IMG/VR virus record: IMGVR_UViG_3300032288_004964 | Coordinates: 310,001 to 374,000 of that record | Length of the DNA stretch: 64,000 nucleotides | Strand: one strand, 5' to 3' | In this document: in pieces, positions 47-52,790 of the stretch | Position numbering within the stretch: the stretch's first letter is position 1 | How the letters are laid out: the number at the start of each line of letters is the position of its first letter | Made by a program: the position numbers and the translations under genes | The notes under the pieces: generated by a model | The model's input: the letters and a program-made list of their open reading frames with translations, nothing else | Told to the model about the DNA's origin: nothing | Databases searched by the model: none

Positions 47-748
47 TTATAAAAAATAATTAATCATTTCAGATGTTTTACCACCATTATTAAAAATCTT
101 ACAAAGATTCTTATATTCTATATCATTTACTTTATAAAGTTGTAAATCAGCACCATATAAAGTATTAATATCACCTGTATTTTCGTCTAAATAATCTTCT
201 GACCACATTGATGAGGTTGGTCTAAATCCAGTTACTTCATATAATCTTTTTAGACAATCTATAACTACTGGAAATTTATCTGGATTAAAAAGACCTAAAT
301 TTAGATAGATAACTGAGTAACCAGGAATGGTATTATTTAATATATTCTCTTGTAGTCTTTCAAGATAACTCTTACCAGATCTATTTTTTGATTCTTCAAC
401 CTCCGAAAAATAAACATCATTGTAGTTCTTACTAGCCAATTTAATCATATCATTTGATAAAGGTTTAGATAAATCAATAAACATATTTTTCCAAGTATCT
501 TGAGTGGATTCACATTCTTTATTAATCCAATTCTCTTCAAAACTCATATCATAAAATAATTGATGTCTAATAGGTCTTGTTATATTATCAGTTGTAAAAA
601 ATTGATATCCAGACTCATATAATTTACACTTAGATAGAGACTCCTCATCTGTTAAATCATAGAATAGTTCTTGAATATCCAATTCAGTCGGAAATTCAGA
701 TTCGGTAATAACTGATTCAAATAACTTATATGTTTTTAAATATTTCAT
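47..748 (-). CDS. Putative virion internal protein (N-terminal leader family)
   Basis: Starts MKYLKTYKLFES; IQELFYDLTDE motif shared with neighbouring paralogs. Confidence 0.55.
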   Translation of the reverse strand: MKYLKTYKLFESVITESEFPTELDIQELFYDLTDEESLSKCKLYESGYQFFTTDNITRPIRHQLFYDMSFEENWINKECESTQDTWKNMFIDLSKPLSNDMIKLASKNYNDVYFSEVEESKNRSGKSYLERLQENILNNTIPGYSVIYLNLGLFNPDKFPVVIDCLKRLYEVTGFRPTSSMWSEDYLDENTGDINTLYGADLQLYKVNDIEYKNLCKIFNNGGKTSEMINYFL

Positions 749-751
749 AAT

Positions 752-1198
752 TTAATTTTTAAATTCAGCTCCAAATCCACATTCTACTCCAAAAACTCTA
801 ACTTTAATTTCCACATATGATATTTTATAGTCTATCATATTGTATTCATCATCCATTAAATTTTCATTATTTATGACAACTTTTTCTTTTTGATTTACAT
901 GATGTTTTCTTGGAATATAAATCTCCCAACTACATCTACTATCTTTTAAGTAATTATCAACTCTAAGAATAAATTCCTTAATTTCATTTATATCAAAGAG
1001 CTCTTTATATCCTCTAAACTTGTCTATTGTAATTCTAAACTCAGGATAATATCCAAAACTTTTATAATATGTATCTTCGGTATCTTCTACTTTTACTCTG
1101 AATCCAGTATCTTGAAATTCAAGAGACATATCTATAATATCATTTTTAATATTATCTCCTCTAGATTCAAATAACTTATATGTTTTTAAATGTTTCAT
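752..1198 (-). CDS. Putative virion internal protein, leader + LExxDxG paralog family
   Basis: MKHLKTYKLFES; IIDMSLEFQDTGFRVKV. Confidence 0.55.
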   Translation of the reverse strand: MKHLKTYKLFESRGDNIKNDIIDMSLEFQDTGFRVKVEDTEDTYYKSFGYYPEFRITIDKFRGYKELFDINEIKEFILRVDNYLKDSRCSWEIYIPRKHHVNQKEKVVINNENLMDDEYNMIDYKISYVEIKVRVFGVECGFGAEFKN

Positions 1199-1704
1199 AA
1201 TTTTATCATTAATCTAAAGTTTGTAAAAGAAATATAATCACCAATACCATCAAAATCTTCTTCTTTACTACAACCAGTTAAAAACTCTACGCCACTAGCA
1301 AAAAATCTTAAAGGTGATTTATCTTTATCGGTTCTATATTTAGTTTCTTTATCTATTGGGTCATAAATTGAATATGTTGAATAATACCATTCGGTTAAAC
1401 TAATAATACTATCTTTTATTTCATACCAAAAGAAAAGATTACCTGGATAACCACCTTGTGGATTAACAACTCCTGGTATTTCTCTATTTCCAGCACCCCA
1501 AGGTTTACTAATATAAACTTCTAAATAAATATCAGTTCTTGTCTTATTAAAGTATCTTTCTGGGTCAATCTCTACATCCTTTCTAATTCTACTAATGTTA
1601 ACTTGTAGACCGTTATCTTCCAATTCAAGAAGAATATCATTAACATAATTTTCAAGATCATCAATACTAGATTCAAATATTTTATATGTTTTTAAATATC
1701 TCAT
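1195..1704 (-). CDS. Putative virion internal protein, leader + LExxDxG family
   Basis: MRYLKTYKIFES; VNDILLELEDNGLQVNI; 4-nt overlap with next gene. Confidence 0.55.
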   Translation of the reverse strand: MRYLKTYKIFESSIDDLENYVNDILLELEDNGLQVNISRIRKDVEIDPERYFNKTRTDIYLEVYISKPWGAGNREIPGVVNPQGGYPGNLFFWYEIKDSIISLTEWYYSTYSIYDPIDKETKYRTDKDKSPLRFFASGVEFLTGCSKEEDFDGIGDYISFTNFRLMIKL

Positions 1705-1705
1705 T

Positions 1706-2092
1706 TTACATTTTATATATTTTTATCATAATAAGACTAGCTTGTCTACCAATCAATTCTATATCTTTATGATCATCAAGATCAATCCATCTGCCATTCT
1801 CATAGAATAATTCAATGTATTCAGGGCCTGAAAATGATATGCTAATACCATATTCTTTTTCAGATATGTATTCTGATATTCTTTCTAATGTGTTTTTAAT
1901 ATTATCTGTTATATCAAATAAATGTGGCCATTTACCATGATCCGATTCTATATCAAAGTATCCTTCACCCCAATGTTTACAAGTTAGCCCTTCATCTTGG
2001 ATATCTAATAACATATCACTAACATCTTGTTCTATTTCTTTTAGATCAGGTTCGATACTTTCAAATATTTTATATGACTTTATATGTTTCAC
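1706..2092 (-). CDS. Putative virion internal protein, leader + LExxDxG family
   Basis: MKHIKSYKIFES; VSDMLLDIQDEGL. Confidence 0.55.
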   Translation of the reverse strand: MKHIKSYKIFESIEPDLKEIEQDVSDMLLDIQDEGLTCKHWGEGYFDIESDHGKWPHLFDITDNIKNTLERISEYISEKEYGISISFSGPEYIELFYENGRWIDLDDHKDIELIGRQASLIMIKIYKM

Positions 2093-2730
2093 TTTTCTTC
2101 TCTTCTTTTTTTCATTAAATCTTTAATGAATTCTTTTATCTCATCATTACAATCAGGAGTGGGTAAGAAACCATATCCTCTCATTCTTGAGTACCATTTG
2201 ATTTGTCCAATGACATTACCACCTTTACTAACATTATAAGTGTCAGTTTTAGCACCTTTCTTTTTAGGTTGTAAAGTAAACTTTAAGGTTGAAACTTCTT
2301 TTTTAGCCTCAAAAATGTCTTTATCAACCGTATATTTTCTTTGAAATGAAGATATTCTTGGATTATAGTAAATGAAAATATTAATATTGTATAATTCCTC
2401 ACCAGAAAACTCTTTCATAAAGTCATCTATATATAAATAGTCATCAGAATTAGGTATACCAATATCAATTGAATAATCACTATCTTTTAGGTAATCTTTT
2501 ACTCTCAATAAAACATCCATTATATCTTCTAATCTAAAAAATCGGTCTTGATTATCTTTAATATAAACTCTTAAGCAATCTGTAGGATCTATACCATTTT
2601 TATAGTAATTAATATTAGATGTAGTATATTCAATGTCACACAAATCTAATTCTAATAAGATATCTTCAATATCTACTTTTATATCAGAGGATATTGATTC
2701 AAATATTTTATATGTTTTTAAGTATCTCAT
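2089..2730 (-). CDS. Putative virion internal protein, leader family
   Basis: MRYLKTYKIFES; IEDILLELD. Confidence 0.55.
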   Translation of the reverse strand: MRYLKTYKIFESISSDIKVDIEDILLELDLCDIEYTTSNINYYKNGIDPTDCLRVYIKDNQDRFFRLEDIMDVLLRVKDYLKDSDYSIDIGIPNSDDYLYIDDFMKEFSGEELYNINIFIYYNPRISSFQRKYTVDKDIFEAKKEVSTLKFTLQPKKKGAKTDTYNVSKGGNVIGQIKWYSRMRGYGFLPTPDCNDEIKEFIKDLMKKRREEK

Positions 2731-3335
2731 CTGTTTACTATTGTTTCATCCGGGAACATCTCTATCAATTTAGATGATAATTCTCTTGTCATTTCAGGTT
2801 CCCAAGCTTTTATACCCCAGTTTTTAGATTCTCTTTGTGGTTGTATGGTAAACTCATAATTTAAAAATCCGCTTTTAACAATACTCATTTTATTTGGAAA
2901 GTATTTATTCCAAGTTATATTATTTTCTCCATGTGAGAATGTTTCACTGTAAACAAATATTTTATTACCTATCATCAAGTGGGTCTTTATTTCTGTTGCC
3001 ATCACTTTTATTTTCAACTCATTACCTTCATCTAAATAATCAAGTGAAAGGTCTTTAGCCATTTGTATTAGTTTCCAGTTTATCTCATCTTTTTTAATAT
3101 CTTCACAAGACAACCAATACTTATCAACTATCTTTTTTTCTTCATCAGAAATACTTTCTATTCCGTTATCTCCATGTACATCATATGGATTCTCATAATC
3201 ATACCCACCTTTTTTCCAAATAGCATACATAAGACCTGTATCTGGATCTAAAACATGACCAATACTATCTAACCTAATAAAGTTATCAGGTATAGTCATA
3301 GAATCATATTCTTCATATAGTTTTAAGTATTTCAT
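2727..3335 (-). CDS. Hypothetical protein with N-terminal leader
   Basis: MKYLKLYEEY; internal DLSLDYLDEG; TAATATATA just upstream on minus strand. Confidence 0.5.
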   Translation of the reverse strand: MKYLKLYEEYDSMTIPDNFIRLDSIGHVLDPDTGLMYAIWKKGGYDYENPYDVHGDNGIESISDEEKKIVDKYWLSCEDIKKDEINWKLIQMAKDLSLDYLDEGNELKIKVMATEIKTHLMIGNKIFVYSETFSHGENNITWNKYFPNKMSIVKSGFLNYEFTIQPQRESKNWGIKAWEPEMTRELSSKLIEMFPDETIVNR

Positions 3336-3345
3336 TGTCTATATA

Positions 3346-4233
3346 TTAAAAGTTCAGTAAGATTTTAATTGTATAGTCATAAATATCACTATCATCATCA
3401 AATTGTCTATTACCTCTTGAAACATCAAATATAACTTCTTCATAGTCTAAAGTTGGTAAAATAGAAGGTAAAACAGCATCTATATCTGATTCTAACTTTC
3501 TAAGATTCATTTTACCAGTTAAATGAGAATCACTATATCCACCAATATTAATAGTAACACAAGGTTTATACATATCTAATATTTTATCTACTGAATAATC
3601 TTTTTTCTTATTAATATCTGAACTATAGATAGTAACATCTCTTCTTTCATCTCCTTTAAATTTATCACCTAATTTAATACCATAATTATCAATATTAAAG
3701 TTAGCACAATTCCATTTTTTATCAGTTACATAATATTGGTCATCATCTCTTCTAAGAAGAATACTTGGATAACCTCCAATACTTAAAGTTGGATTAACAA
3801 TATCTTTTAATATAGAAATAATAATATTTAATTTATCACTATCTTTTGGTTTTGGAACAGATAGGAGTCCGTTATACTTTCTATTATTTGGTTTATCATG
3901 ATTCTCATAATCACCATAAGCAACACAACACATTGTCCATTTTTTCTTACTCTCAGGTATCTCATCATAGACATCATACATTCTATCATTGATATAATCA
4001 GTATCTACTTTAGACATTGCAATAAACATTCTATCAACTAAATCTTTAATCTTTTCCCAGTATCCTTCGCCAATAAAATGATCTGACCATTTTTTTAATG
4101 ATGATTCACTTACCATTGACTTTTGATTTTGATTCCATTGATATCTTTTTAGATCTTCAAACCAATCATAGATACCATATTTGGAAGATTCTGATTTTTC
4201 TAAAAAAGAATTATATTTTTCTAAATGTTTCAT
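3346..4233 (-). CDS. Hypothetical protein with N-terminal leader
   Basis: MKHLEKYNSFLE; 295-aa ORF in coupled operon. Confidence 0.5.
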   Translation of the reverse strand: MKHLEKYNSFLEKSESSKYGIYDWFEDLKRYQWNQNQKSMVSESSLKKWSDHFIGEGYWEKIKDLVDRMFIAMSKVDTDYINDRMYDVYDEIPESKKKWTMCCVAYGDYENHDKPNNRKYNGLLSVPKPKDSDKLNIIISILKDIVNPTLSIGGYPSILLRRDDDQYYVTDKKWNCANFNIDNYGIKLGDKFKGDERRDVTIYSSDINKKKDYSVDKILDMYKPCVTINIGGYSDSHLTGKMNLRKLESDIDAVLPSILPTLDYEEVIFDVSRGNRQFDDDSDIYDYTIKILLNF

Positions 4234-4646
4234 TTTGGAATTACTTTAATATTTACATTTCTAACATCACCAATCATTTCAGAATTCTCATCTAAGAAAT
4301 GACCATCTTTATAATTTAATATGTAAGCAAAATCTTTTTTCTCACCACCAGATACGGTTGCACTTATTCCCCAATTTAGTGATCTCACATAAGAAACAAT
4401 GTGTAGTATTTCATCTTCTATTTCACTTAACTTAAATGAGTCATTATTTATCTTATTGACATCAAGAATGATTCTTCTATCATCTTTATCATTACTTTTG
4501 AATATTGAAGGAACTCCAGGATCTTGACCTAATAATGTTTTAAATCCTTTTTCTTTGAAGTCAATTATAATATCTTCTATAGTTTGCATAATACCACTTC
4601 TCTCATCAGTAGATTCAAATATGTTATATTTCTTTAAGTATTTCAT
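4230..4646 (-). CDS. Putative virion internal protein, leader + LExxDxG family
   Basis: MKYLKKYNIFES; IEDIIIDFKEKGFK. Confidence 0.55.
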   Translation of the reverse strand: MKYLKKYNIFESTDERSGIMQTIEDIIIDFKEKGFKTLLGQDPGVPSIFKSNDKDDRRIILDVNKINNDSFKLSEIEDEILHIVSYVRSLNWGISATVSGGEKKDFAYILNYKDGHFLDENSEMIGDVRNVNIKVIPK

Positions 4647-5176
4647 ATTTCAAAGATAACTTTTTCACTATTTGGTCTTGAATAAACTATCTTGTTAATA
4701 TTCTTAACTGAGTATTTATAATTAGGATTTACATACTTCTTACCTTCTCCTTTATTTAAATAAGCGATTGTTATATGTGGTTTATAAGTTGGAAACTTAT
4801 CATTATTAGGTAGCTTTGATAACTCATCATGTAATTCTTGTAGACCAGAATCCGAAACAACATTGAATTTCAAAACATCAAATTGTTCATTTTCAAAAAG
4901 ATTTATACCATCTATATCAATATGTAATTCACCATTAAACTTATCTAAAATAGATTTAACTTGATCTTCAGTAACATCTTTTTCAAGTCCATATAACAAT
5001 GTCAGATGTGGATATTCTTGAATACCGTGAGAATCATCACCTCCTGTATAAACATCTTTAGGATCAATAGAATTAGTTAATTCATCCCAATTACTTACAG
5101 GAACTTCAATCATTACACACCCGTATTCATATCCAGATGATTCTTTTATAAATTGTAAATAGTTTTTAATTATCAT
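4643..5176 (-). CDS. 2H phosphoesterase (Acb1/T4 57B-like) with N-terminal leader
   Basis: Two HxT motifs (PHLTLLYG, PHITIAY) about 77 aa apart; leader MIIKNYLQFIKES. Confidence 0.75.
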   Translation of the reverse strand: MIIKNYLQFIKESSGYEYGCVMIEVPVSNWDELTNSIDPKDVYTGGDDSHGIQEYPHLTLLYGLEKDVTEDQVKSILDKFNGELHIDIDGINLFENEQFDVLKFNVVSDSGLQELHDELSKLPNNDKFPTYKPHITIAYLNKGEGKKYVNPNYKYSVKNINKIVYSRPNSEKVIFEI

Positions 5177-5688
5177 ATACTACCTTGTATTATTATTCTT
5201 TTTTCACCACCTCTATTATTATAAGAGAATTTGAATCCAATTCCAATTTCACTTTGTAATCTTTTTACAGCTACTAAGAAATCTTCAGCTTCTTCTCTTT
5301 CCTTGCTACCTTCTTTAAATTCTTCCTTTTCATCAGACATTGACCAATCATTTTTAGAAAATAATAAAGCTCTATTACTTCCTGAAATAGGGTTTAAATT
5401 ATGTCCTTTAAGCTCTTTAGCCTCCCAAGTTATTTCACCATCTGAATTTATTTCACCAGTCCAATCTAATAAATTTCTTCTATCCGATGGTTGATAAACT
5501 TCCTCTCTAGGTACCATTCTACAATTGAATTGTGGATTTTTCCAAATAGATATACCTGGGTAAGAAACATCTGATATCCAATACCAACCATTATCTTCAA
5601 ATTCTAAGAAACAATTTTTAATTGTATCAAGAACTTGATTATAGATTTGCTCTTCAATATTTTCATTAAATTTTCTAAGATATTTCAT
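5173..5688 (-). CDS. Hypothetical protein, leader + LExxDxG family
   Basis: MKYLRKFNEN; IKNCFLEFEDNGW. Confidence 0.5.
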   Translation of the reverse strand: MKYLRKFNENIEEQIYNQVLDTIKNCFLEFEDNGWYWISDVSYPGISIWKNPQFNCRMVPREEVYQPSDRRNLLDWTGEINSDGEITWEAKELKGHNLNPISGSNRALLFSKNDWSMSDEKEEFKEGSKEREEAEDFLVAVKRLQSEIGIGFKFSYNNRGGEKRIIIQGSI

Positions 5689-5938: not shown

Positions 5939-5965
5939 AAAAGAGGTCTATTGACCTCTTTTTTT
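5937..5965. terminator. Bidirectional intrinsic terminator
   Basis: A-tract GAGGTC-TATT-GACCTC T-tract between convergent genes. Confidence 0.8.
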
Positions 5966-6752
5966 ATAAATTGTATTTAATATCTACCTTTTTAGGATCT
6001 GAATATAAATTCTTATTATAGTATTGGTCAAATACTTCTCTGTATTTTTGTTCCCATTCTTCTATATTAGGAATATTCATATCTTCCATTTTCTTTCCTA
6101 ATCCAGTTGACATATAAGCTTGTAACTCATCTGGTAAAACATGGTCAGCATAGCCATAATCAGTTATACATTTAAACATTGAATCTTTAACAACCCCGTC
6201 ACATTCACTATTTAATTTAGACATAGCTTCTTTATAATCAGTCAAAGTAAACCACATAGCATGAGCAAATTCATGTTCAAGTAATCTATTTGATAATTCA
6301 TCTACACCTAATAAGTAATATTTACTATCTCCCTCAATTTCTTTTATAGTATTAATAATAGATAACATAATTTTATCATAGTTATTAATTTCATCTTCTG
6401 GTATACCAAACATACATTCTTCTAAAATAGTAGATGGTATATTAAATCCTGACCAATCAGCACCATAAGTAAATTCTTGTTTACCATAATGTTGTTTGTA
6501 AAGATCTTGGAATCTTGAAAATTTGAATTGTTTACTGATTATTTCTTCAAATGCACTTTCATAAAATTCTTGTGGTCTTAGAAATAACATAGCTCTTGAA
6601 TGAGAGTCTTCTACTTTAACTGCCCATATGTGTTCACCAACATGATATAATTCAATAGATTGAAGATATAGTTCCATTTGTGGAGCTAGTAATCTATTAG
6701 GGTCAGTTATTAACTTTTCTAAAAATAATTTATAGGATTTAATTAGTTTCAT
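5964..6752 (-). CDS. Putative zincin-like metalloprotein with N-terminal leader
   Basis: HEFAH (HExxH) plus downstream DELQAY; leader MKLIKSYKLFLE. Confidence 0.55.
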   Translation of the reverse strand: MKLIKSYKLFLEKLITDPNRLLAPQMELYLQSIELYHVGEHIWAVKVEDSHSRAMLFLRPQEFYESAFEEIISKQFKFSRFQDLYKQHYGKQEFTYGADWSGFNIPSTILEECMFGIPEDEINNYDKIMLSIINTIKEIEGDSKYYLLGVDELSNRLLEHEFAHAMWFTLTDYKEAMSKLNSECDGVVKDSMFKCITDYGYADHVLPDELQAYMSTGLGKKMEDMNIPNIEEWEQKYREVFDQYYNKNLYSDPKKVDIKYNL

Positions 6753-6767: not shown

Positions 6768-7017
6768 TTATAATTCTGATTCATCTTTTAATAAATCAAA
6801 AACAGCCTTAGCGCCTTCAATAAAACTTTCCTTAGATATGTTGAATTTTTCATCTGATTCACCTTCTTGTCTATATACCCAAGCCCATTCTGAAGACATA
6901 TCTTCAAATTATTCCTGTTTTAGTATTTTCAATCCAAATATAGTTATAGTTATCTGCCATGATTTTTGATTGATCAGATGATTCTAAGCTCTCATTAAAT
7001 TTCTTTAAGTGTTTCAT
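6768..7017 (-). pseudogene. Leader-bearing gene apparently broken into two short ORFs (7017-6904, 37 aa; 6899-6768, 43 aa)
   Basis: Manual translation: MKHLKKFNESLESS...GII* then, in another frame, MSSEWAWVYRQEG...KDESEL*. Confidence 0.4.
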
Positions 7018-7019
7018 AA

Positions 7020-7325
7020 TTATTCAACTTCATATTTTGTAACTTGTTTCAATTTAACAACATCCTTACCATCAACTAACTGGAATTTAACTTTCTTATC
7101 GTCAAAGTTATACGGATCAGAATTAAATATCTCCATCTGTTCTTCTGTTACTGGATATTCCTCACCCCAAACATCTCTACTATAAACACTCCATTCATAT
7201 CCATCAACACCAAGAGTGCCAACTTTAATTTCGGGATTTTCTGTTTTTATATTCTTCGAAGCGTTCTCTTGTTCATCACGCATTTGTTGGTCATAAAAGT
7301 TTTCAAATATTTTAATGTGTTTCAT
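7020..7325 (-). CDS. Hypothetical protein with N-terminal leader
   Basis: MKHIKIFENF. Confidence 0.5.
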   Translation of the reverse strand: MKHIKIFENFYDQQMRDEQENASKNIKTENPEIKVGTLGVDGYEWSVYSRDVWGEEYPVTEEQMEIFNSDPYNFDDKKVKFQLVDGKDVVKLKQVTKYEVE

Positions 7326-17553: not shown

Positions 17554-17565
17554 GCTAACTCTTTT
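17535..17565. terminator. Bidirectional intrinsic terminator
   Basis: AAAAGAGTTAGC-TTAA-GCTAACTCTTTT. Confidence 0.8.
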
Positions 17566-17998
17566 ATATTGCTTTGAAAGCAAAAGTAATTGAATCTATT
17601 TTAAAGTTGTCTGGTAATACATCAACTGATTTATAATAGGTATAATTTGGTATTTTTACAACATAAATATATTCTAGTTCTAAACCTAATTCATCTTTAG
17701 AATAAGATTCAGCAAATCTTAAAGTTTCTTTTATTTCATCTATGTTAAATTCTTTTAGAGTTGGTCCATTATGAGTCATAACCCTTTTCTCAATTTTAAC
17801 ATCAATAGTTTTAATAGTATAGTTTTTAGTTTCTAAGTTCCAGGAACCAAAAGAATCAGATTTTGAAAAATCCATTTTTTGAGAAGTAGATTCTTTCACA
17901 CTAACTCTAAATCCTTCATCTTGTAACTCTAAGAATAACTCTTTGAACCAATCAAATTGATTAGACTCAAATATCTTATAATTTTTTAAGTATCTCAT
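17564..17998 (-). CDS. Putative virion internal protein, leader + LExxDxG family
   Basis: MRYLKNYKIFES; FKELFLELQDEGFRVSV; TATATATA upstream. Confidence 0.55.
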   Translation of the reverse strand: MRYLKNYKIFESNQFDWFKELFLELQDEGFRVSVKESTSQKMDFSKSDSFGSWNLETKNYTIKTIDVKIEKRVMTHNGPTLKEFNIDEIKETLRFAESYSKDELGLELEYIYVVKIPNYTYYKSVDVLPDNFKIDSITFAFKAI

Positions 17999-20622: not shown

Positions 20623-21963
20623 ATGAAACTATTTAGATATAAAGAATTTATAAAAGAAGGGTTAGAAGTTAAAAATTCAATTCCTACTTATGAACAAGCA
20701 TTAGAATTATGTTCTATTGAAGAATCTCCATTTTATGAATCAAAAATGGAAGTAGATGAATATAATGTATCTGTTTTTAATTATAGACTTGCTCAATACA
20801 AAGACTTTTCAAATCCTATTCCTGAAAAGCCAGAATTAAAAGGATTTGAAATGAGAGGTTTAACTTTTATATTTAATAAAGATGGTTCTTTATTTAAAAG
20901 ATATGTGTTGCTTGAAAAGTTTTTTAATTTAAATCAAGTACCAGACTCTTTATACTCTGTTGTTAAAAACTACAAAATTAAGTTTGTTAATAATAAAGAA
21001 GATGGTTCAATTGCTTCTTTTGTTAAACTACCAAATGGTAAAGTTGTTGGTAAATCCAAAATGGGATTTGATAATGACCAAGCTAATGGTATAAATAGAA
21101 TTTACAAAACTAATTCAGATATTAAAAAATTTGTTGATTGGGCTTTAGATAATGATATAGTCCCAGTATTCGAATATGTTGCTCCAAACAACCGTATTGT
21201 TCTAAGATATCCAGGTGAAGAATTAATCTTATTAAGATTAAGAGATAATAAAACAGGTAAGCATATTGATATTAGAGACCACTTGGATAAAGTTGGTAAT
21301 ATTAGAATTGCTCCTTTTGAAGATGAAATTAAAGATTTAGATACATTAATTGAATTAAACGCTACTCAAGTTGATAAAGAAGGTTCTATTGTTACTTGTG
21401 AAGATGAGAATGGTCATGACTTTTTCTTTAAGTTAAAAACACCTTGGTACTGTGAAAGACATGGTTTATTAACAAATGATATTTATAGAGAACATATTAT
21501 TATTAATTATATCTTAGATGATAAGATAGATGATATATTAGGTCAAATACCAGAAGAAGAAGTTGAGGCTCATCAAAGAATTAATAAGATTATTTCTATT
21601 GTCAAAAAAGCAATTTCTGACAAAGTGTCTGAAATTGAAAAATCTTATGATGATTTTATTAAATCAGGTATTTCTAAAAAAGATTATGCTATAAAAAATA
21701 GAGTTGGTAACACTAACTTTGGTTTTGTTATGAATATGGTTAAAGCAAATGATTTAAGAAAGATGTCTAAAGAAGAAATATTAGATATCTATGATAATAT
21801 GGAAGAATATGAAAAGGCATTACAAAGATGTCAACCATATGAAATGGCTAAAGAATGGATTAAAGATTTAACTAAGAGATTAAACCTTTCTAGAGAATGG
21901 CTAAAGAAAAAAGATCCAACTCTTTTCTTTCAAGAACCAGAAGAAAGTGATGATGATAATTAA
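20623..21963 (+). CDS. T4 Rnl1-type RNA ligase with N-terminal leader
   Basis: EMRGLTF, KFFNLNQ, KEDGS (adenylation Lys), FEYVAPNNRIV, EG.., KLKTPWY; start moved to MKLFRYKEFIKE after terminator and TAATATATA. Confidence 0.85.
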   Translation: MKLFRYKEFIKEGLEVKNSIPTYEQALELCSIEESPFYESKMEVDEYNVSVFNYRLAQYKDFSNPIPEKPELKGFEMRGLTFIFNKDGSLFKRYVLLEKFFNLNQVPDSLYSVVKNYKIKFVNNKEDGSIASFVKLPNGKVVGKSKMGFDNDQANGINRIYKTNSDIKKFVDWALDNDIVPVFEYVAPNNRIVLRYPGEELILLRLRDNKTGKHIDIRDHLDKVGNIRIAPFEDEIKDLDTLIELNATQVDKEGSIVTCEDENGHDFFFKLKTPWYCERHGLLTNDIYREHIIINYILDDKIDDILGQIPEEEVEAHQRINKIISIVKKAISDKVSEIEKSYDDFIKSGISKKDYAIKNRVGNTNFGFVMNMVKANDLRKMSKEEILDIYDNMEEYEKALQRCQPYEMAKEWIKDLTKRLNLSREWLKKKDPTLFFQEPEESDDDN

Positions 21964-22257: not shown

Positions 22258-22668
22258 ATGAAACATCTAAAGAGATATAAAATATTTGAAAATGCTACTA
22301 GCATAATTGATAATGTAAATGATATGTTATTTGAACTTAATGATGAAGGATTTAAGTGTAGAGTATCTGAGGGGCTAACACCAGATTTATTACCACCAGT
22401 TATTATTAATAATGTTCCAATGGGTTATAAATTAGTTAAAACTCATGATGTAATACTTGTAAATTTTTCTCAAGACAAACCGGGCTTTGATTTTGATGAT
22501 ATTAAAGAAGTATATTGGAGAATAAAATCATATCTTGAAGATAATGGATATATTGAAGATGGTGATAGTCTCCAAGATAGACTCAAAGATAAAGAAGAAG
22601 AAAATAAAAAAATCATGGGTGCCGGTAAACTACTATCAGTTGTAAGCTCATTTACAAAACCTATATAA
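22258..22668 (+). CDS. Putative virion internal protein, leader + LExxDxG family
   Basis: MKHLKRYKIFEN; VNDMLFELNDEGFKCRV. Confidence 0.55.
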   Translation: MKHLKRYKIFENATSIIDNVNDMLFELNDEGFKCRVSEGLTPDLLPPVIINNVPMGYKLVKTHDVILVNFSQDKPGFDFDDIKEVYWRIKSYLEDNGYIEDGDSLQDRLKDKEEENKKIMGAGKLLSVVSSFTKPI

Positions 22669-30518: not shown

Positions 30519-30881
30519 ATGAGAAAAATGAGTCAATTAATAAAGGAAAGTGCAGAGTATGTAGGAGTTGGTTGTCAAAGTCTTAACTCTGAGTTAATAT
30601 TCCTAACAGAAGGTGGCCATCAAGTAGGAAGTCTTGTAATTATCTACAATGAAAATACCGCTTCTATTTTTTCAGTAGAAGTTCTAAATAAACATAGAGG
30701 AAAAGGATATGGTAAGAAATTAGTAGTTGAGGCTATTAACAGAGCTAAGTCTAAAGGATCATTGTCATTAGAGTTAAACACTGAAACTGATAACACAGTT
30801 GCTAATAATCTTTATAAATCATTAGGATTTGAACTAAATGGATTAAAAGATGATTTTAATAATTATAGAAAAATATTATAA
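30519..30881 (+). CDS. GNAT acetyltransferase with leader-like start
   Basis: VLNKHRGKGYGKKL motif A; NTVANNLYKSLGF; MRKMSQLIKES. Confidence 0.85.
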   Translation: MRKMSQLIKESAEYVGVGCQSLNSELIFLTEGGHQVGSLVIIYNENTASIFSVEVLNKHRGKGYGKKLVVEAINRAKSKGSLSLELNTETDNTVANNLYKSLGFELNGLKDDFNNYRKIL

Positions 30882-37281: not shown

Positions 37282-38865
37282 TTATACCACTCTTAGATAT
37301 CTAGGTGTATCAAACTTATCGGTTTGTATTGAAAGTGCGTATCTTAAAATCTTAGTTACTACATCATTAGATTCTTTGTGACTTATCTCATGTAATTGAA
37401 TTATAGAAAGAACAACTTGTAAAGATTGTACTCTTGAGATTAACTTCTTTTCGCTATTAGAAATATCTTTCCCTCTTGTTATTGGTCTAACAATAATTAA
37501 ATTACCTTCTGTTTGTTTCTTAATCTTATTAATAGTAGATATTAAACTTTTAACTAAAGATTTTAGTTGGTCAATATTTAAAGCTGATAACTCCTGATAG
37601 GTTTGTAATTTTTGAATCTTTAATCCTGATTGTATCTTAGAATCCAATATTCTTTTAATTGCTTTGAATGATACTTTACCATGTCTTGAAGAAGAACCTT
37701 CAACTTCACCATCAATGTTTTGATCTTTGCTAGTATCAGATGAATCAAAATTTATATTTCTGTCTTTAACATCAACATCTTTATCATTTCTGTGTTTCCA
37801 AATTGAAGTAGTTGATATTTTAGAAGATATTCCTCTCATATCAGATCCAACCATAAATGATTTAATGAAAAAGTCCGGTAATTCTTTACCTAATTCAGAA
37901 TTAGTAATAATCTTAAAACTTCCAGATACTTTCTTTAATGAAAGTGGAATTAACATTTTAGAATCAAAGTATTTATTCAATACCATATTGAGTTCATTTA
38001 TTGTTTCAGCAGAATTGATATCAGTTAGAATTCTTTCTTTATCAATAAAACTAATCATATAAACATCAGCTGGACAATATTTAGTTATATTTATATCAGT
38101 AAAATCTTCAATTTTTGATAATTCTTTATACTTATTGTAAATAGCTACATAAGGTGAGTCAGATCCACTATAACCAACATGGTATATAGAGTAAACTTTA
38201 TTAATATCTATAAAATTACCTGTCTTAGACCATAATTTATTAGGTATTCTAAAAAATGTTTCTAACCAGTTAGGATCTTGTAAAAAGTCATCTATTAGAT
38301 TTTCATCTATTTTAAAACCTCTCATATCATCTTCTTTCATCACCGAATCTGGTAAATGAACTAAGTTGGATGGATAATTTACAAACTTATTAAAAAATCT
38401 TAGTAGATTTGATGAACTTAAATAAGATTCAGGAAAAGCTTGCTTTATTGCTAAAAATATACACTGAACTGATTCAAATTGTTTTACCAATCTACCAGCA
38501 CCAGCAGAACCAAACTCTCTTGTTTTCTTAAACTGATTTAATCTAAATTCATCACCATCTTCATCTTTGAAGACTGGTTCATATCTATTACCCTTTGTAA
38601 AGTATTTCTTAGCTTTATCAGTATCATATTTTCCATCAGTAGTTATATTATCAACCACATCAGATGGTTCTACCCAATTACCCTCTTCATCTTTCATTTT
38701 ATCTACTTCAATATTTTTATTATTGTTAGTAGTAAATGAAGGATCTTCTTTTAGTTTTCTAACTAAAACATCACCTCTTTTTTCATCATCTCTTACTTTA
38801 CCTAGTTCAGCAAGATTTAATTCTACTTCTTCTAAGAAGCTTTTATAATTTGGTATTTTTTTCAT
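37282..38865 (-). CDS. Large hypothetical protein with N-terminal leader
   Basis: MKKIPNYKSFLEE; PADVY...PLSLKK could be a restriction-like nuclease motif. Confidence 0.55.
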   Translation of the reverse strand: MKKIPNYKSFLEEVELNLAELGKVRDDEKRGDVLVRKLKEDPSFTTNNNKNIEVDKMKDEEGNWVEPSDVVDNITTDGKYDTDKAKKYFTKGNRYEPVFKDEDGDEFRLNQFKKTREFGSAGAGRLVKQFESVQCIFLAIKQAFPESYLSSSNLLRFFNKFVNYPSNLVHLPDSVMKEDDMRGFKIDENLIDDFLQDPNWLETFFRIPNKLWSKTGNFIDINKVYSIYHVGYSGSDSPYVAIYNKYKELSKIEDFTDINITKYCPADVYMISFIDKERILTDINSAETINELNMVLNKYFDSKMLIPLSLKKVSGSFKIITNSELGKELPDFFIKSFMVGSDMRGISSKISTTSIWKHRNDKDVDVKDRNINFDSSDTSKDQNIDGEVEGSSSRHGKVSFKAIKRILDSKIQSGLKIQKLQTYQELSALNIDQLKSLVKSLISTINKIKKQTEGNLIIVRPITRGKDISNSEKKLISRVQSLQVVLSIIQLHEISHKESNDVVTKILRYALSIQTDKFDTPRYLRVV

Positions 38866-38896
38866 CTAACATATATATTAAATATGTTAGACGGAA

Positions 38897-41656: not shown

Positions 41657-42361
41657 TTACAATTTAGAAATAACAGGATCATTATTATCAACACCTTTAA
41701 TTGGAATTGGTGGATTTACATCAAAATTCTTATTAATAAAAGTCTTTAACTTATTTTCTATAAAGTGGTCAGGAACCTCACCATCTGGATTCATTAATTC
41801 CATTTCTAAACTAAGTTCTGTTGAAAATCTATCTAAAACTTCTGGCTTAATAGCCTCAACTAATCTATCAGAAACAACAAAAGCTCTTGTAAATCTATCT
41901 TTAAGTGGAACTTCTCCTTCTGGTAATTTCATATAAATATCTATCATCTTCTTCAAAAAGTCTGTATATTTTGAATGCGGGTTTATATAATTAAATATTG
42001 GATCAAATACTCTACGAAACATTCTAGATGTACCAAATACAATTCCAACAATTGCTACTATTGGAAAGAATGGAACAAGAGCTAATGGTATAGCAGATGG
42101 TAGAATATTAAATATACCTTTTTTTATGTCTGTTTTTCTTTTAGCATCAATAGCATCTTTAAAGATAGCATTTAACATACCAAATGTAAACTTTTCACCT
42201 TTTTCATTTAAGTAATGGCCAAGATGACCATTTTTTGCTAAGTGAACTTGTTTGTTTAATTCATCTTCATCACTAACTCCCATTTCAATTAACTTAGCTC
42301 TGATATTTCTATCATATCTTTCTAAAATTAAAAAATGGTTATATCTCTTTAATGTGCGCAT
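41657..42361 (-). CDS. Hypothetical protein with N-terminal leader and hydrophobic hairpin
   Basis: MRTLKRYNHFLILE; lies between the topoisomerase genes. Confidence 0.55.
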   Translation of the reverse strand: MRTLKRYNHFLILERYDRNIRAKLIEMGVSDEDELNKQVHLAKNGHLGHYLNEKGEKFTFGMLNAIFKDAIDAKRKTDIKKGIFNILPSAIPLALVPFFPIVAIVGIVFGTSRMFRRVFDPIFNYINPHSKYTDFLKKMIDIYMKLPEGEVPLKDRFTRAFVVSDRLVEAIKPEVLDRFSTELSLEMELMNPDGEVPDHFIENKLKTFINKNFDVNPPIPIKGVDNNDPVISKL

Positions 42362-51252: not shown

Positions 51253-51305
51253 CATCATGATGATATTTCTATAATAAATACTGACGAAAATTGACATCGG
51301 ATTTT

Positions 51306-52034
51306 TTATAGTCTGATCCATTCTCTGAATCTAATTACAGATTCATGTAATGTTTCAACAAAATTAAACTCTTTAAGGAAAGTTGAGTATTCATCTTTAT
51401 ATCCTTTTTTAGTTTCATCAAACTTATCTTTAGTAAATTGCCAATTAAATGATAATTGATTTGGTGTTTTAAATCCAAAGAAACCTAATACTTCTTTTTC
51501 AAGTTTTACAGCTTCTTCACCATTCCAATTGTGACCTACCGCAACTATACCACACTCTTTATCTTTTAATAAATTAGATTCACCTAAAGTAGCATGTCTA
51601 TTTTCTAACCAAGTTAACCTTTCAATTAACTGAGTATAGATAGCATTCATCTTACCCCAACGGATTGAGCCGAAAAAGATAACTATATCAGCATCATAAA
51701 TAGCATTTGCTACTTTGTGCATTTCATCTGATTTATTATTAACAGAAGCCCAACATCTAATAAACTTATTAGGATTATTACTCTTTAAAATAGAATCTTT
51801 GATACCACAAGTATTTCCTTTATGTGTTGATACATTACCCTCACAAGGAAATATTTTAAGCTTACTGACATTTATTATATCAACATTATCTAATCTCTTT
51901 TTAAGTTCATCTGCTATAATAGATGATTTAGGAAGTTCTTTTTCACCTTCCCATCTATTAGATGTGGTTAGAAAAACAATCTTTTTACCTTCTTGTTTCT
52001 TTAAATAATTATATAATCTTTTAAGCTTATCCAT
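51306..52034 (-). CDS. Flavodoxin-like / NADPH-dependent FMN reductase family protein
   Basis: KIVFLTTSNR, IFPCEG, DEM...IYDADIVIFFGSIRWG, LIERL. Confidence 0.75.
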   Translation of the reverse strand: MDKLKRLYNYLKKQEGKKIVFLTTSNRWEGEKELPKSSIIADELKKRLDNVDIINVSKLKIFPCEGNVSTHKGNTCGIKDSILKSNNPNKFIRCWASVNNKSDEMHKVANAIYDADIVIFFGSIRWGKMNAIYTQLIERLTWLENRHATLGESNLLKDKECGIVAVGHNWNGEEAVKLEKEVLGFFGFKTPNQLSFNWQFTKDKFDETKKGYKDEYSTFLKEFNFVETLHESVIRFREWIRL

Positions 52035-52082
52035 TAAAGTATATATAAATTTTTAATATATAAATAAAATCAAAATATTAAG

Positions 52083-52181
52083 ATGAAAAATAGAATAAGA
52101 AAATTTAACGAGTCAGATGAAAACTTTTATAGTATATCTGATGAAAACGGAAATATGTCGTCCGGTAAGTTGATTTTATGA
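52083..52181 (+). CDS. 32-aa peptide with N-terminal leader (not in ORF track)
   Basis: MKNRIRKFNESDENF...; TAATATATA upstream. Confidence 0.35.
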   Translation: MKNRIRKFNESDENFYSISDENGNMSSGKLIL

Positions 52182-52223
52182 AAGATAAATAATTTATACC
52201 TTAAACAATACTAAACAAACTTT

Positions 52224-52790
52224 ATGAAACATTTAAAATATTTTGAAGCTAAAAAGAAAAATTATCAGGAATTACTAGATGAGTATGCTGAAGATATCAT
52301 CAGAGTTTTACCTTTATATTATAATAATTTCTCAACTGATACTTTACATAATTATATTGATGAGTTAATATGGGAATGTAGAGAAGCGGATAGATTAAGA
52401 GGAGATGATGAAGTTTTAAGTGAAGAAGTTGTAAGAGTTTTGATAGATGAAATTAAAGAAGTAGCAGGTAGTTGGTCTTCATCAAAATTACTTGATATTT
52501 ATTATGATTGTTTACCTCATGTTAAACATATAAATAAAGATAAGGTTGAAGTATTAAAAGAGATATTTCTTGACTATTCAGATGAGGGTGGTGAAATATT
52601 AATAAGTAAGACAGCTAAATTCCGTGATGAAAGATATGAAGTGAGATTAGAGTTGGAAAATGTATTTTTAAAAATAAACTTTGAAGAAGTTTTTGGTAGA
52701 GTTAAAGAATTTATGGGAATTGAAAGTTACCATATTACAGGAACAAAAGATTTAATAACAATTGAATTTTGGAAACCTTTACCAAAATAA
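52224..52790 (+). CDS. Hypothetical protein, leader + LExxDxG-like motif
   Basis: MKHLKYFEA; LKEIFLDYSDEGG. Confidence 0.55.
   Translation: MKHLKYFEAKKKNYQELLDEYAEDIIRVLPLYYNNFSTDTLHNYIDELIWECREADRLRGDDEVLSEEVVRVLIDEIKEVAGSWSSSKLLDIYYDCLPHVKHINKDKVEVLKEIFLDYSDEGGEILISKTAKFRDERYEVRLELENVFLKINFEEVFGRVKEFMGIESYHITGTKDLITIEFWKPLPK

What the first reader, a model, noticed from the sequence alone, without database searches (positions are those of the whole stretch)
47..52790. N-terminal MK(H/Y)LKxYxxFE leader on about 25 proteins: probable capsid-targeting sequence for a large injected cargo
Seen in ORFs 47, 752, 1195, 1706, 2089, 2727, 3346, 4230, 4643, 5173, 5964, 6904, 7020, 17564, 20623, 22258, 22670, 25118, 28054, 29832, 30519, 37282, 41657, 52083 and 52224. 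The pattern is basic/aromatic and ends in (F/L/I)-x(0-1)-E followed by a small residue. Established: T4 internal proteins carry a 10-aa capsid-targeting sequence (MKTYQEFIAE-like) removed by gp21 after Glu. Seen: most of these genes or operons follow the AATATATA motif. Inference: dozens of diverse proteins are packaged and delivered with the DNA, far more than T4's three IPs. This set is mutually exclusive with the C-terminal-tag set, suggesting two address labels tied to two transcription programmes.
Basis: partly seen in the sequence, partly recalled or inferred. Interest (0 to 1): 0.72.

Follow-up and report, generated by a model that had tools for sequence, protein, structure and literature searches.

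The report
T4-like capsid-targeting leader, massively expanded
About one in eight proteins of this 385-kb freshwater giant phage starts with the same 8-14-residue peptide, which has the sequence features that phage T4 uses to load a few proteins into its head, so this phage may pack dozens of different proteins with its DNA; packaging itself is untested.

Summary
The window is bases 310001-374000 of a 385,333-bp phage. Genome-wide, 64 of 494 ORFs (23 in the window) start with a leader in three interchangeable forms: MK[HY]LKxYK[IL]FE-S, M[IK]KK[YF]x[DE]F[IL]xE and MKxLKKFNE. A general pattern hits 47 N-termini, against 5 after shuffling.

The leader is conserved as peptide, not DNA. AlphaFold2 leaves it outside the fold in two proteins. 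With it removed, the 64 proteins form 56 unrelated BLAST groups.

It carries the mapped determinants of the T4 capsid-targeting sequence MKTYQEFIAE: hydrophobic or aromatic residues at positions 4 and 7, and a closing [L/I/F]-x-Glu (92% of leaders, 22% of other proteins).

The phage has a T4-type portal, major capsid protein and prohead protease. The protease is fused to a scaffold with at least nine YSEY[IL]AE repeats. A gp55-like late sigma factor is present. Leader genes share the promoter TTAATATATA with virion genes, usually abutting the ATG.

A 634-kb relative repeats everything (142 of 990 ORFs). Tenacibaculum phage PTm1 lacks leaders and the scaffold repeat.

Best reading (0.55): a T4-style prohead address label removed by the protease. 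Packaging, cleavage and injection are untested.

The parts
47..748 (-). Leader ORF, 233 aa, MKYLKTYKLFE|S (form A). Operon-internal, no promoter of its own.
   Evidence: no Pfam hit
752..1198 (-). Leader ORF, 148 aa, MKHLKTYKLFE|S (form A). Member of family 1.
   Evidence: only a sub-threshold Pfam hit, 17 bits against a cut-off of 27
1195..1704 (-). Leader ORF, 169 aa, MRYLKTYKIFE|S (form A). Promoter-like motif at 1714-1721.
1706..2092 (-). Leader ORF, 128 aa, GTG start, MKHIKSYKIFE|S (form A).
2089..2730 (-). Leader ORF, 213 aa, MRYLKTYKIFE|S (form A).
2727..3335 (-). Leader ORF, 202 aa, MKYLKLYEEYD-S. Asp replaces the closing Glu. Promoter motif at 3340-3347, 4 nt from the ATG.
   Evidence: In T4, Asp at CTS position 10 blocks processing but not targeting (PMC9026906).
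3346..4233 (-). Leader ORF, 295 aa, MKHLEKYNSFLE|K.
   Evidence: only a sub-threshold Pfam hit, 19 bits against a cut-off of 27
4230..4646 (-). Leader ORF, 138 aa, MKYLKKYNIFE|S (form A).
4643..5176 (-). Leader ORF, 177 aa, MIIKNYLQFIKE|S (form B), on a 2H phosphoesterase (LigT/Acb1-like) domain.
   Evidence: Pfam PF13563 E 6e-9, PF23474 (Acb1) E 1e-5, PF02834 E 3e-5
5173..5688 (-). Leader ORF, 171 aa, MKYLRKFNE|N (short form). Promoter motif at 5694-5701, 5 nt from the ATG.
5964..6752 (-). Leader ORF, 262 aa, MKLIKSYKLFLE|K.
6904..7017 (-). Short leader ORF, 37 aa, MKHLKKFNE|S. May be the N-terminal part of a gene split from 6768-6899.
   Evidence: a relative (L070) has a 68-aa version
7020..7325 (-). 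Leader ORF, 101 aa, MKHIKIFE|NFYD.
17564..17998 (-). Leader ORF, 144 aa, MRYLKNYKIFE|S (form A, family 1). Promoter motif at 18003-18010, 4 nt from the ATG.
20623..21963 (+). Leader ORF, 446 aa, MKLFRYKEFIKE|G (form B), on a T4 Rnl1-type RNA ligase. Promoter motif at 20610-20617, 5 nt from this ATG.
   Evidence: Pfam PF09511 E 1.6e-18, domain starts at residue 76
22258..22668 (+). Leader ORF, 136 aa, MKHLKRYKIFE|N (form A, family 1). Promoter motif at 22246-22253, 4 nt from the ATG. Folded with AlphaFold2.
   Evidence: M1, F10 and E11 are invariant in 24 homologues. Residues 1-13 have pLDDT below 50 and the fold starts at helix 16-29.
22670..22813 (+). Weak case, 47 aa, MKKKKRRIKRFTEF. Not counted among the 64.
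   Evidence: does not fit the leader patterns
25118..26080 (-). Leader ORF, 320 aa, MILKYNQYLSE|K (form B, family 2). Promoter motif at 26103-26110, 22 nt from the ATG.
28054..28608 (-). Leader ORF, 184 aa, MKIRKFIDFINE|E (form B). Promoter motif at 28613-28620, 4 nt from the ATG.
29832..30473 (-). Leader ORF, 213 aa, MKHIKSFRIFE|S (form A). Promoter motif at 30479-30486, 5 nt from the ATG.
30519..30881 (+). Doubtful case, 120 aa, MRKMSQLIKESAEY. No aromatic pair. Not counted.
37282..38865 (-). Leader ORF, 527 aa, MKKIPNYKSFLE|E. Promoter motif at 38872-38879, 6 nt from the ATG.
   Evidence: no Pfam hit
41657..42361 (-). Probable leader ORF, 234 aa from the internal ATG, MRTLKRYNHFLILE|R. Has one transmembrane-like segment.
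52083..52181 (+). Short leader ORF, 32 aa, MKNRIRKFNE|S.
52224..52790 (+). Leader ORF, 188 aa, MKHLKYFE|A.

Best explanation
The leader is a T4-type capsid (prohead-core) targeting sequence that this phage clade has expanded to a very large protein set.

Proposed mechanism:
1. Leader genes are transcribed from the phage's own A/T-only promoter TTAATATATA. This is probably read with a gp55-like late sigma factor, and the same promoter drives the portal, protease-scaffold, capsid, sheath and fibre genes. For leader genes the promoter mostly abuts the ATG, so the mRNAs would be leaderless.
2. The free N-terminal peptide has a hydrophobic or aromatic stripe at positions 4, 7 and often 10. It docks the protein onto the scaffolding core while the prohead assembles.
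3. The gp21-type prohead protease, fused here to the scaffold, cuts after the closing Glu of [L/I/F]-x-E. This frees the mature protein inside the head. The scaffold is cut at its own repeated YSEY[IL]AE sites and cleared.
4. The cargo stays with the DNA and is probably delivered into the next host. It includes a 2H phosphoesterase (Acb1/LigT-like), an Rnl1 RNA ligase, a CCA-adding/poly(A)-polymerase-family enzyme, an NFACT-R RNA-binding protein encoded next to the capsid gene, and about 50 small acidic orphan proteins.

Shown here: the motif anatomy, its peptide-level conservation, its portability, the T4-type head genes and the promoter sharing. Inferred: binding to the core, cleavage, retention and injection.
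For: 1. Match to the T4 CTS. The T4 sequence is MKTYQEFIAE (PMC8442874). Residues 4 and 7 carry targeting and residues 8 and 10 carry processing (PMC9026906). Here position 4 is aliphatic or aromatic in 49 of 64 leaders and position 7 is aromatic in 46 of 64. Form B, for example MIKKYDEFINE, reads Y-x-E-F-I-x-E like T4.
2. Cleavage motif. [LIVFMY]-x-E with Glu at residue 8-14 occurs in 92% of leaders and 22% of other N-termini. gp21 cuts after L/I-x-E.
3. T4-type head module. Gp23 E 2.7e-28, Portal_T4 E 9e-56, head maturation protease phrog_207 E 3.5e-31, and a weak S77 match. The protease is fused to a scaffold with at least nine YSEY[IL]AE repeats by a strict pattern, roughly a dozen by eye. 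The capsid propeptide has AEYAE and SINE sites.
4. Co-occurrence. The relatives L088 and LR745206 have both the leaders and the scaffold repeat. PTm1 has neither.
5. Peptide-level selection. Synonymous codons vary freely, including Ser TCN/AGY and Leu TTA/CTN. Operon-internal genes without a promoter keep the leader.
6. Detachable label. AlphaFold2 gives pLDDT below 50 for residues 1-13 of the window protein 22258-22668, although M1, F10 and E11 are invariant. In the NFACT-R protein residues 1-20 are low-confidence, and the putative cut E12|S13 lies in a low-confidence stretch at residues 12-17. Orthologues swap form A for form B.
7. Portability. After removing 16 residues, the 64 proteins form 56 BLAST groups. 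Several unrelated Pfam domains follow the leader.
8. Position. Three leader genes lie in the head module. The order capsid gene, NFACT-R gene, peptidase gene, acidic-protein gene is conserved in relatives.
9. Shared promoter. The extended consensus is the same for leader genes and virion genes. A gp55-like late sigma is present (phrog_234, E 4e-7).
10. Replication. LR745206 has 142 leader proteins among 990 ORFs, 86% with the Glu motif, and the same promoter bias.
Against: - There is no direct evidence of packaging or cleavage. No cultured phage with the leader or virion proteome was found.
- The cargo is mostly acidic (median pI 5.15, only 12.5% above pI 8), unlike the highly basic T4 internal proteins.
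- 64 to 142 different head-internal proteins would exceed any characterised virion. SPN3US has about 50 head proteins.
- The promoter is the genome's main promoter. It also precedes a topoisomerase gene and homing endonucleases, so timing is not proven late.
- Two or three leader proteins have membrane segments.
- In form A the aromatic pair and the I-x-E overlap, so the register differs from T4.
- T4 gp61.1, an annotated hypothetical protein encoded beside the primase gene, also starts MKTFKEFIKE. A CTS-like N-terminus therefore need not by itself mean packaging.
Confidence: 0.55

Rival explanations
1. The leader is a peptide address or docking motif for some partner other than the prohead. 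Examples would be a client tag for the phage's own Hsp70 system (DnaK and DnaJ are encoded in this window), a tag for another late-phase hub, or a stability signal. The resemblance to the T4 CTS would then be convergent, since both are short amphipathic N-terminal peptides.
For: - The leader is a conserved linear motif outside the fold.
- It is basic and hydrophobic, which resembles Hsp70-binding peptides in general (my own knowledge, not tested here).
- The phage encodes DnaK and a J-domain protein whose HPD signature is visible at 13957-15015.
- The cargo is acidic and includes cytoplasmic enzymes.
- T4 gp61.1 shows a CTS-like N-terminus on an annotated hypothetical protein.
Against: - This does not explain the near-universal closing [L/I/F]-x-Glu (92%).
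- It does not explain the matching repeat in the protease-scaffold or its co-occurrence with leaders across phages.
- It does not explain leader genes inside the conserved head module.
- No precedent for such a tag turned up in the literature searches, which were aimed at capsid targeting.
Confidence: 0.2
2. The leader targets proteins to the prohead core, but they act only in assembly as extra core or scaffold-like components. They are degraded or expelled with the scaffold and are not delivered as cargo.
For: - The acidic 149-aa and the 122-aa leader proteins in the head module resemble T4 core proteins gp67 and gp68 in position and size (T4 gene order from my own knowledge).
- T4 core proteins are cut into fragments and leave the head.
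- Acidic proteins fit poorly beside packed DNA.
Against: - 56 unrelated sequence groups, including RNA-repair and phosphoesterase enzymes, make poor scaffold parts.
- The set turns over quickly between relatives, as T-even internal proteins do.
Confidence: 0.12
3. The conserved N-terminus is a by-product of nucleotide-level constraints. On leaderless late mRNAs the first 30-40 nt of coding sequence would serve as the initially transcribed region or as a ribosome-loading site.
For: - 34 of 64 leader genes have the promoter core 4-9 nt from the ATG.
- The leader codons are A/U-rich.
Against: - Synonymous and conservative codon changes are frequent at conserved positions: TAT/TTT/TTC, TTA/CTA/ATT, TCT/AGT, AAA/AAG.
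- 21 of 64 leader genes have no promoter motif within 45 nt, and many of them are operon-internal, yet they keep the leader.
- 46 genes with the same leaderless promoter arrangement lack the leader.
- Orthologues exchange form A and form B while keeping the aromatic pair and the Glu.
Confidence: 0.06
4. The shared N-terminus only reflects common descent: one expanded family of paralogues.
For: - A subset is paralogous. Family 1 in the window shares a second motif, DILLELxDEGF. Family 2 has 4-5 members.
- Many leader genes lie in tandem arrays.
Against: - After trimming 16 residues the 64 proteins fall into 56 BLAST groups, 53 of them singletons.
- The leader precedes unrelated Pfam domains: 2H phosphoesterase, Rnl1, NFACT-R, PolyA_pol, ankyrin and PQ-loop.
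- More distant NFACT-R homologues align only from residue 25 onward.
Confidence: 0.03

Closest known systems
Capsid targeting sequence (CTS) of phage T4 internal proteins IPI-III and Alt (Mullaney and Black 1996, as reviewed in PMC9026906 and PMC3012670)
   Same: - A roughly 10-residue N-terminal peptide that starts with MK.
- Hydrophobic or aromatic residues at positions 4 and 7.
- Closed by L/I-x-Glu, the gp21 cleavage motif.
- The only feature shared by otherwise unrelated, fast-evolving proteins.
- The phage has gp20, gp21 and gp23 homologues.
- Form B is nearly the T4 sequence (YxEFIxE).
   Different: - Scale: 64 proteins here (13% of ORFs) and 142 in a 634-kb relative, against 2-3 matches among 282 T4 ORFs by the same pattern.
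- Three length variants of 8-14 residues.
- The cargo is mostly acidic and includes RNA-repair-type enzymes.
- The protease and scaffold are one polypeptide whose repeats resemble the leader.
- The host is probably a freshwater member of Bacteroidota.
- Packaging is untested.
N-terminal propeptides of inner-body and ejection proteins in phiKZ, 201phi2-1 and SPN3US (PMC5694885, PMC10052503)
   Same: - Giant phages that load many proteins into the head.
- A gp21-related protease cuts after Glu.
- The propeptides are thought to target proteins to the prohead.
   Different: - Those propeptides are mostly 100 residues or longer and are not one shared short motif.
- Their cleavage motif is A/S/G-x-E rather than a hydrophobic residue followed by x-E.
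- Only 8 SPN3US head proteins are processed.
Encapsulin cargo-loading peptides and the P22 scaffold coat-binding helix (my own knowledge, not tested here)
   Same: A short terminal peptide is enough to direct unrelated proteins into an HK97-fold shell.
   Different: - Those labels are C-terminal and bind the shell protein directly.
- They are not removed by a maturation protease.
- They may be a closer analogy for the separate C-terminal tag seen in this genome.
Repeated promoter cassettes (PeSL) that shuffle genes in hyperplastic regions of T4-type genomes (my own knowledge, not tested here)
   Same: Here a terminator hairpin, the TTAATATATA promoter and the leader coding sequence recur in front of many small novel genes in tandem arrays.
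   Different: The conserved element here extends into the protein and is conserved as peptide. Recombination at the leaders was not tested.

Membership tests
T4-type capsid targeting sequence (CTS) | Located at the extreme N-terminus, about 10 residues, beginning with Met-Lys | tested here: met
   Nearly all high-scoring matches lie at Met1 or at the first ATG after the promoter. The closing Glu lies at residue 8-14.
T4-type capsid targeting sequence (CTS) | Hydrophobic or aromatic residues at positions 4 and 7, the targeting determinants mapped in IPIII | tested here: met
   Position 4 is aliphatic or aromatic in 49 of 64 leaders and position 7 is aromatic in 46 of 64. In other proteins the figures are 192 of 430 and 70 of 430. 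The T4 mapping is from PMC9026906.
T4-type capsid targeting sequence (CTS) | Ends in the gp21 cleavage motif L/I-x-Glu | tested here: met
   92% of leaders and 22% of other N-termini have [LIVFMY]-x-E in residues 6-16. The figure is 86% against 24% in LR745206. Position P3 is often Phe, so the motif is broader than strict L/I.
T4-type capsid targeting sequence (CTS) | The phage encodes a gp21-type prohead protease, a scaffolding core, a gp23-type capsid protein and a gp20-type portal | tested here: met
   phrog_207 E 3.5e-31 and PF03420 E 1.5e-5 (below the Pfam cut-off); PF07068 E 2.7e-28; PF07230 E 9e-56. A scaffold-like repeat region is fused to the protease.
T4-type capsid targeting sequence (CTS) | A portable label: not part of the fold, and shared by otherwise unrelated proteins | tested here: met
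   AlphaFold2 gives pLDDT below 50 over the leader in two proteins. The set forms 56 BLAST groups after trimming. Several unrelated Pfam domains follow the leader.
T4-type capsid targeting sequence (CTS) | Drives physical incorporation into proheads and is removed by the protease | not testable with these tools
   No virion proteome and no cultured relative with the leader were found. The complex prediction gave no verdict.
T4 internal proteins (the cargo class) | Small, highly basic, DNA-associated proteins | tested here: not met
   Median pI is 5.15 and only 12.5% exceed pI 8. The NFACT-R protein (pI 9.4) is one of the few basic members.
phiKZ/SPN3US-type propeptides | Long propeptides (about 100 residues or more) with A/S/G-x-E sites | tested here: not met
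   The leader is 8-14 residues and P3 is hydrophobic. The comparison is with PMC5694885.
Sec, Tat or lipoprotein signal peptides | A hydrophobic core of about 10 residues or more after a basic N-region | tested here: not met
   The leader has no hydrophobic run, as the sequences show. Only 2 of 64 leader proteins have any transmembrane-like segment, against 36 of 430 others.
Single paralogous gene family | Homology that extends beyond the N-terminus | tested here: not met
   53 of the 56 groups are singletons after trimming 16 residues.

The most novel reading that the evidence does not exclude
Huge Bacteroidota phages of this clade sort about a quarter of their proteome with two peptide labels. 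An N-terminal T4-like leader, on 13-14% of ORFs and expressed from the virion-gene promoter, would load 60-140 different proteins into the head. That would be a pre-packed starter kit, including RNA-repair and Acb1-like enzymes, delivered with the DNA. A separate C-terminal tag, on 8-12% of ORFs without that promoter, would mark a different and probably early class. If so, much of the unexplained coding capacity of huge phages would be injected cargo.
Probability: 0.3. Interest if true: 0.88.

Novelty: new variant of a known kind. Interest (0 to 1): 0.72.

Why it matters
Huge phages carry hundreds of orphan genes with no known role. A recognisable address label would assign about one in eight of them to a testable class, candidate virion cargo, from sequence alone. 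It would extend the T4 capsid-targeting principle from a handful of proteins to 60-140 per phage.

It points to specific functions that may be delivered ahead of gene expression: RNA repair, degradation of cyclic-nucleotide signals, and RNA binding.

It also suggests that the label copies the scaffold's own repeat, which gives a simple model for how such labels arise.

In practice, a short natural leader with many sequence variants could be used to load proteins into capsids.

Tried and rejected
- **Complex prediction.** Protease domain (residues 1-240) with the first 40 residues of the leader protein at 752-1198: score 0.00, no verdict. This is not evidence either way.
- **Fold search.** Foldseek of the family-1 model against the PDB found no match at E <= 0.001, so the fold remains unassigned.
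- **Pfam.** Scans of 40 leader proteins left most of them unannotated.
- **Cultured anchor with proteomics.** The nearest cultured phages by capsid protein are Tenacibaculum PTm1/PTm5, Chryseobacterium MA9V and Sphingomonas PAU, at 24-26% identity. PTm1 has 0 strict leader matches and 9 of 339 by the loose pattern, which is near background. It cannot serve as a model.
- **RNA evidence.** Freshwater metatranscriptome contigs cover only the capsid gene of relatives. They give no transcript starts and almost no coverage of the adjacent leader gene. DNA runs show only that the phage occurs in freshwater, lake and groundwater samples.
- **Host-type promoter.** The Bacteroidetes pattern TTTG...TAnnTTTG precedes only 9 genes, none with a leader. 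This is too few to define an early class.
- **Scaffold-repeat matrix.** Scored against N-termini, leaders score higher than other proteins (Mann-Whitney p = 5e-9). Only form B scores well in absolute terms, so 'the leader equals one scaffold repeat' holds for form B only.
- **Literature.** Searches found no paper describing such leaders in huge phages.
- **Rivals rejected.** The single paralogous family and the Sec-type signal peptide.

Full report
**Context.** The window is bases 310001-374000 of a 385,333-bp virus record with 28.7% G+C and a CheckV completeness of 95%. Its DnaK gene is 80-81% identical in DNA, and its major capsid protein 70-72% identical in protein, to two uncultured 634-642-kb phage genomes, LR745206 and LR756502. 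Near-identical DNA occurs in freshwater, lake, plankton and groundwater metagenomes.

**1. The observation.** ORFs 22670 and 30519 are weak. Genome-wide I count 64 leader proteins among 494 ORFs. They come in three forms:
- Form A: MK[HY]LKxYK[IL]FE-S.
- Form B: M[IK]KK[YF]x[DE]F[IL]xE.
- Short form: MKxLKKFNE.

A general pattern hits 47 N-termini. It hits 0.37% of internal Met positions and a mean of 5.1 in shuffled N-termini. The strict DNA pattern occurs 24 times here and 54 times in LR745206. It does not occur in Tenacibaculum phage PTm1 or for the reversed control pattern. Fifty-five IMG/VR stretches, all but one at 24-32% G+C, hold the exact form A on many different proteins. Applied to T4, the same pattern finds IPII, IPIII and gp61.1 plus three probable false hits among 282 ORFs.

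**2. It is a peptide signal, not a DNA signal and not paralogy.**
- At conserved positions the codons vary freely: TAT/TAC/TTT/TTC, TTA/CTA/CTT/ATT/ATA, AAA/AAG, GAA/GAG, and both serine codon families.
- Genes inside operons that have no promoter of their own keep the leader.
- With the first 16 residues removed, the 64 proteins fall into 56 BLAST groups, 53 of them singletons.
- The leader precedes a 2H phosphoesterase (LigT/Acb1-like), a T4 Rnl1-type RNA ligase, an NFACT-R domain, a PolyA_pol (CCA-adding family) domain, ankyrin repeats, a PQ-loop membrane protein and a weak methyltransferase match.
- Orthologues of the NFACT-R protein carry form A in some phages and form B in others, in front of the same mature sequence. 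More distant homologues align only from residue 25 onward.
- AlphaFold2 leaves the leader outside the fold in both proteins tested. In the protein at 22258-22668, residues 1-13 have pLDDT below 50, although M1, F10 and E11 are invariant in 24 homologues. In the NFACT-R protein residues 1-20 are low-confidence, and the putative cut E12|S13 lies in a low-confidence stretch at residues 12-17.
- Leader proteins are soluble (2 of 64 with a membrane-like segment) and mostly acidic, with a median pI of 5.15.

**3. Comparison with the T4 capsid targeting sequence.** The T4 CTS is MKTYQEFIAE (PMC8442874). Suppressor analysis of IPIII placed targeting at residues 4 and 7 and processing at residues 8 and 10. 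The protease gp21 cuts after L/I-x-E, and Asp at position 10 blocks processing but not targeting (PMC9026906).
- Here position 4 is aliphatic or aromatic in 49 of 64 leaders and position 7 is aromatic in 46 of 64.
- 92% of leaders close with [LIVFMY]-x-E with the Glu at residue 8-14, against 22% of other proteins.
- Form B reads Y-x-E-F-I-x-E, as T4 does.
- A few leaders have Asp in place of the Glu, for example the protein at 2727-3335.

**4. The machinery is present.** Outside the window, at genome 28-38 kb, lie several T4-type head genes:
- A T4-type portal (PF07230, E 9e-56).
- A head maturation protease (phrog_207, E 3.5e-31; PF03420 below the Pfam cut-off).
- A Gp23-type major capsid protein (PF07068, E 2.7e-28).
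- A T4-type large terminase, encoded further along at about 49-51 kb.

The protease is fused to a 470-residue acidic scaffold-like region. It contains at least nine YSEY[IL]AE repeats by a strict pattern and roughly a dozen by eye. Each repeat is a candidate I/L-x-E site and resembles form B and the T4 CTS. The capsid propeptide carries AEYAE and SINE just ahead of the segment that I align from memory, not from a fetched sequence, with the T4 gp23 cleavage region. The protease begins MKPVLIVE, which is comparable to the LIE-9 site noted for gp21.

Three leader genes lie in this module. The order capsid gene, NFACT-R gene, peptidase gene, acidic-protein gene is conserved in relatives. The scaffold repeat is present in the three leader-rich phages examined and absent from the protease-scaffold of leader-free PTm1. 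That is only four genomes.

**5. Transcription.** One motif dominates upstream regions. ATATATA lies within 60 nt of 128 ORFs, a 14-fold enrichment, and its extended consensus is TTAATATATA[C/G/A]. It precedes the capsid, protease-scaffold, portal, terminase, putative sheath and fibre genes with an A-rich 17-30-nt untranslated region. It precedes leader genes mostly 4-5 nt from the ATG, which implies leaderless mRNAs. That arrangement holds for 34 of 64 leader genes and 55 of 430 others (odds ratio 7.7, p = 4e-12). A gp55-like late sigma factor is encoded (phrog_234, E 4e-7). This fits an A/T-only promoter of the T4 late type; the T4 consensus TATAAATA is from my own knowledge. The motif also precedes a topoisomerase gene and homing endonucleases, and a TATATAAA variant precedes the ribonucleotide reductase gene. 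'Late only' is therefore not shown.

**6. The second label.** A C-terminal tag, R[DN]xK[IL]xx[IL][LF], ends 39 proteins (7.9%, against 0.3% of internal windows). It is conserved as peptide. It never coincides with the leader (p = 0.005), and only 3 of the 39 genes have the promoter motif.

**7. Replication.** In LR745206 the same scripts give the following among 990 ORFs:
- 142 leader proteins.
- 124 C-terminally tagged proteins, with an overlap of 4 (p = 3e-5).
- The Glu motif in 86% of leaders against 24% of others.
- An ATG-abutting promoter in 37% of leader genes, 4% of tagged genes and 10% of other genes.

**8. Interpretation.** The best-supported mechanism is a T4-style prohead-core address label that the prohead protease removes, used here on an unprecedented number of proteins. 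Shown: the anatomy, the portability, the machinery and the promoter sharing. Inferred: binding to the core, cleavage, retention and injection.

Points against:
- The cargo is acidic.
- The number of proteins is very large.
- The promoter is not exclusive to late genes.
- A few leader proteins have membrane segments.
- T4 gp61.1 shows a CTS-like N-terminus on an annotated hypothetical protein.

Rivals and their weights:
- Another docking function, for example with the phage Hsp70 system: 0.2.
- Core components that are not delivered: 0.12.
- A constraint from leaderless mRNAs: 0.06.
- Paralogy: 0.03.

**9. Novelty.** The CTS principle is known, and reviews already suggest that it lets T4-like phages load varied proteins. 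I found no report of a leader family of this size, of its link to a scaffold repeat, or of a two-label proteome in huge phages. I rate it a new variant of a known kind.

**10. What led nowhere.** The complex prediction gave no verdict. Foldseek found no match for family 1. The metatranscriptome contigs were uninformative. No cultured relative carries the leader.

Noticed in passing
window 15345-15881, 16360-16650, 18403-18858, 31385-31888, 32611-32796, 36448-36873, 36851-37252, 55632-56054, 56689-57021, 58093-58365, 58374-58667, 59222-59971, 61504-61797, 61797-62183 and others; 39 genome-wide: A second recurrent label: a C-terminal peptide R[DN]xK[IL]xx[IL][LF], 0-6 residues before the stop. 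It is on 7.9% of proteins, against 0.3% of internal windows, and is conserved as peptide. It never occurs together with the N-terminal leader and almost never follows the ATATATA promoter. 124 proteins carry it in LR745206. Its function is unknown.
   Followed up: partly
window 3340-3347, 5694-5701, 18003-18010, 20610-20617, 22246-22253, 28613-28620, 30479-30486, 38872-38879 and about 150 sites genome-wide: The promoter-like motif TTAATATATA[C/G/A] comes in two layouts. In one it lies 4-5 nt from the ATG, which implies leaderless mRNA (78 genes). In the other it is followed by a 17-45-nt A-rich untranslated region (75 genes, including all major virion genes). A gp55-like late sigma factor is encoded at genome 41341-41667 (-).
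   Followed up: partly
window 22913-24802 (+), 13957-15015 (-): The phage encodes its own Hsp70 system. DnaK is 81% identical in DNA to that of LR745206. A DnaJ with a J-domain HPD signature is also present, and a second DnaJ-like gene lies at genome 196109-196816.
   Followed up: no
window 4643-5176 (-), 20623-21963 (+); genome 382995-384179 (+): Three RNA-end-processing enzymes all carry the leader: a 2H phosphoesterase (LigT/Acb1-like), an Rnl1 RNA ligase and a PolyA_pol/CCA-adding family enzyme. Together they look like an RNA (tRNA) repair set.
   Followed up: partly
window 24847-25173 / 25118-26080 (-) and 6768-6899 / 6904-7017 (-): Two pairs of adjacent ORFs look like one gene split by a frameshift. 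The 108-aa ORF aligns with the C-terminal part of family-2 paralogues whose N-terminal part is the 320-aa leader ORF. A relative has a 68-aa version of the gene at 6904-7017.
   Followed up: no
window 19084-19902 (-), 35556-36458 (+), 60701-61408 (+); genome 35051-35446 (+): A seven-member family of homing-endonuclease-like genes. One copy lies between the portal and protease-scaffold genes. Most copies have the ATG-abutting promoter.
   Followed up: no
window 45752-47440 (+), 47568-50264 (+): Two large proteins have classic N-terminal signal-peptide-like hydrophobic segments, and a 1547-aa paralogue lies at genome 216908-221551. They look like secreted or surface proteins, unlike the leader set.
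   Followed up: no
genome 29105-30454, 93111-94202, 158544-159728, 268370-269617: Four paralogues of a peptidase (phrog_4191, E 3e-66 for the one tested). One lies in the head module right after the leader-bearing NFACT-R gene, and that position is conserved in relatives.
   Followed up: no
T4 record NC_000866, 18966-19130 (-): T4 gp61.1 is a 54-aa hypothetical protein encoded next to the primase gene. It starts MKTFKEFIKE, which is very like the T4 CTS. I did not check whether it is packaged.
   Followed up: no
window 9669-10223 (+) and eight other genes genome-wide: A host-type Bacteroidetes promoter pattern (TTTG, a 17-23-nt spacer, then TAnnTTTG) precedes only nine genes. None has a leader, and at least one carries the C-terminal tag. 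These are candidate early genes.
   Followed up: partly
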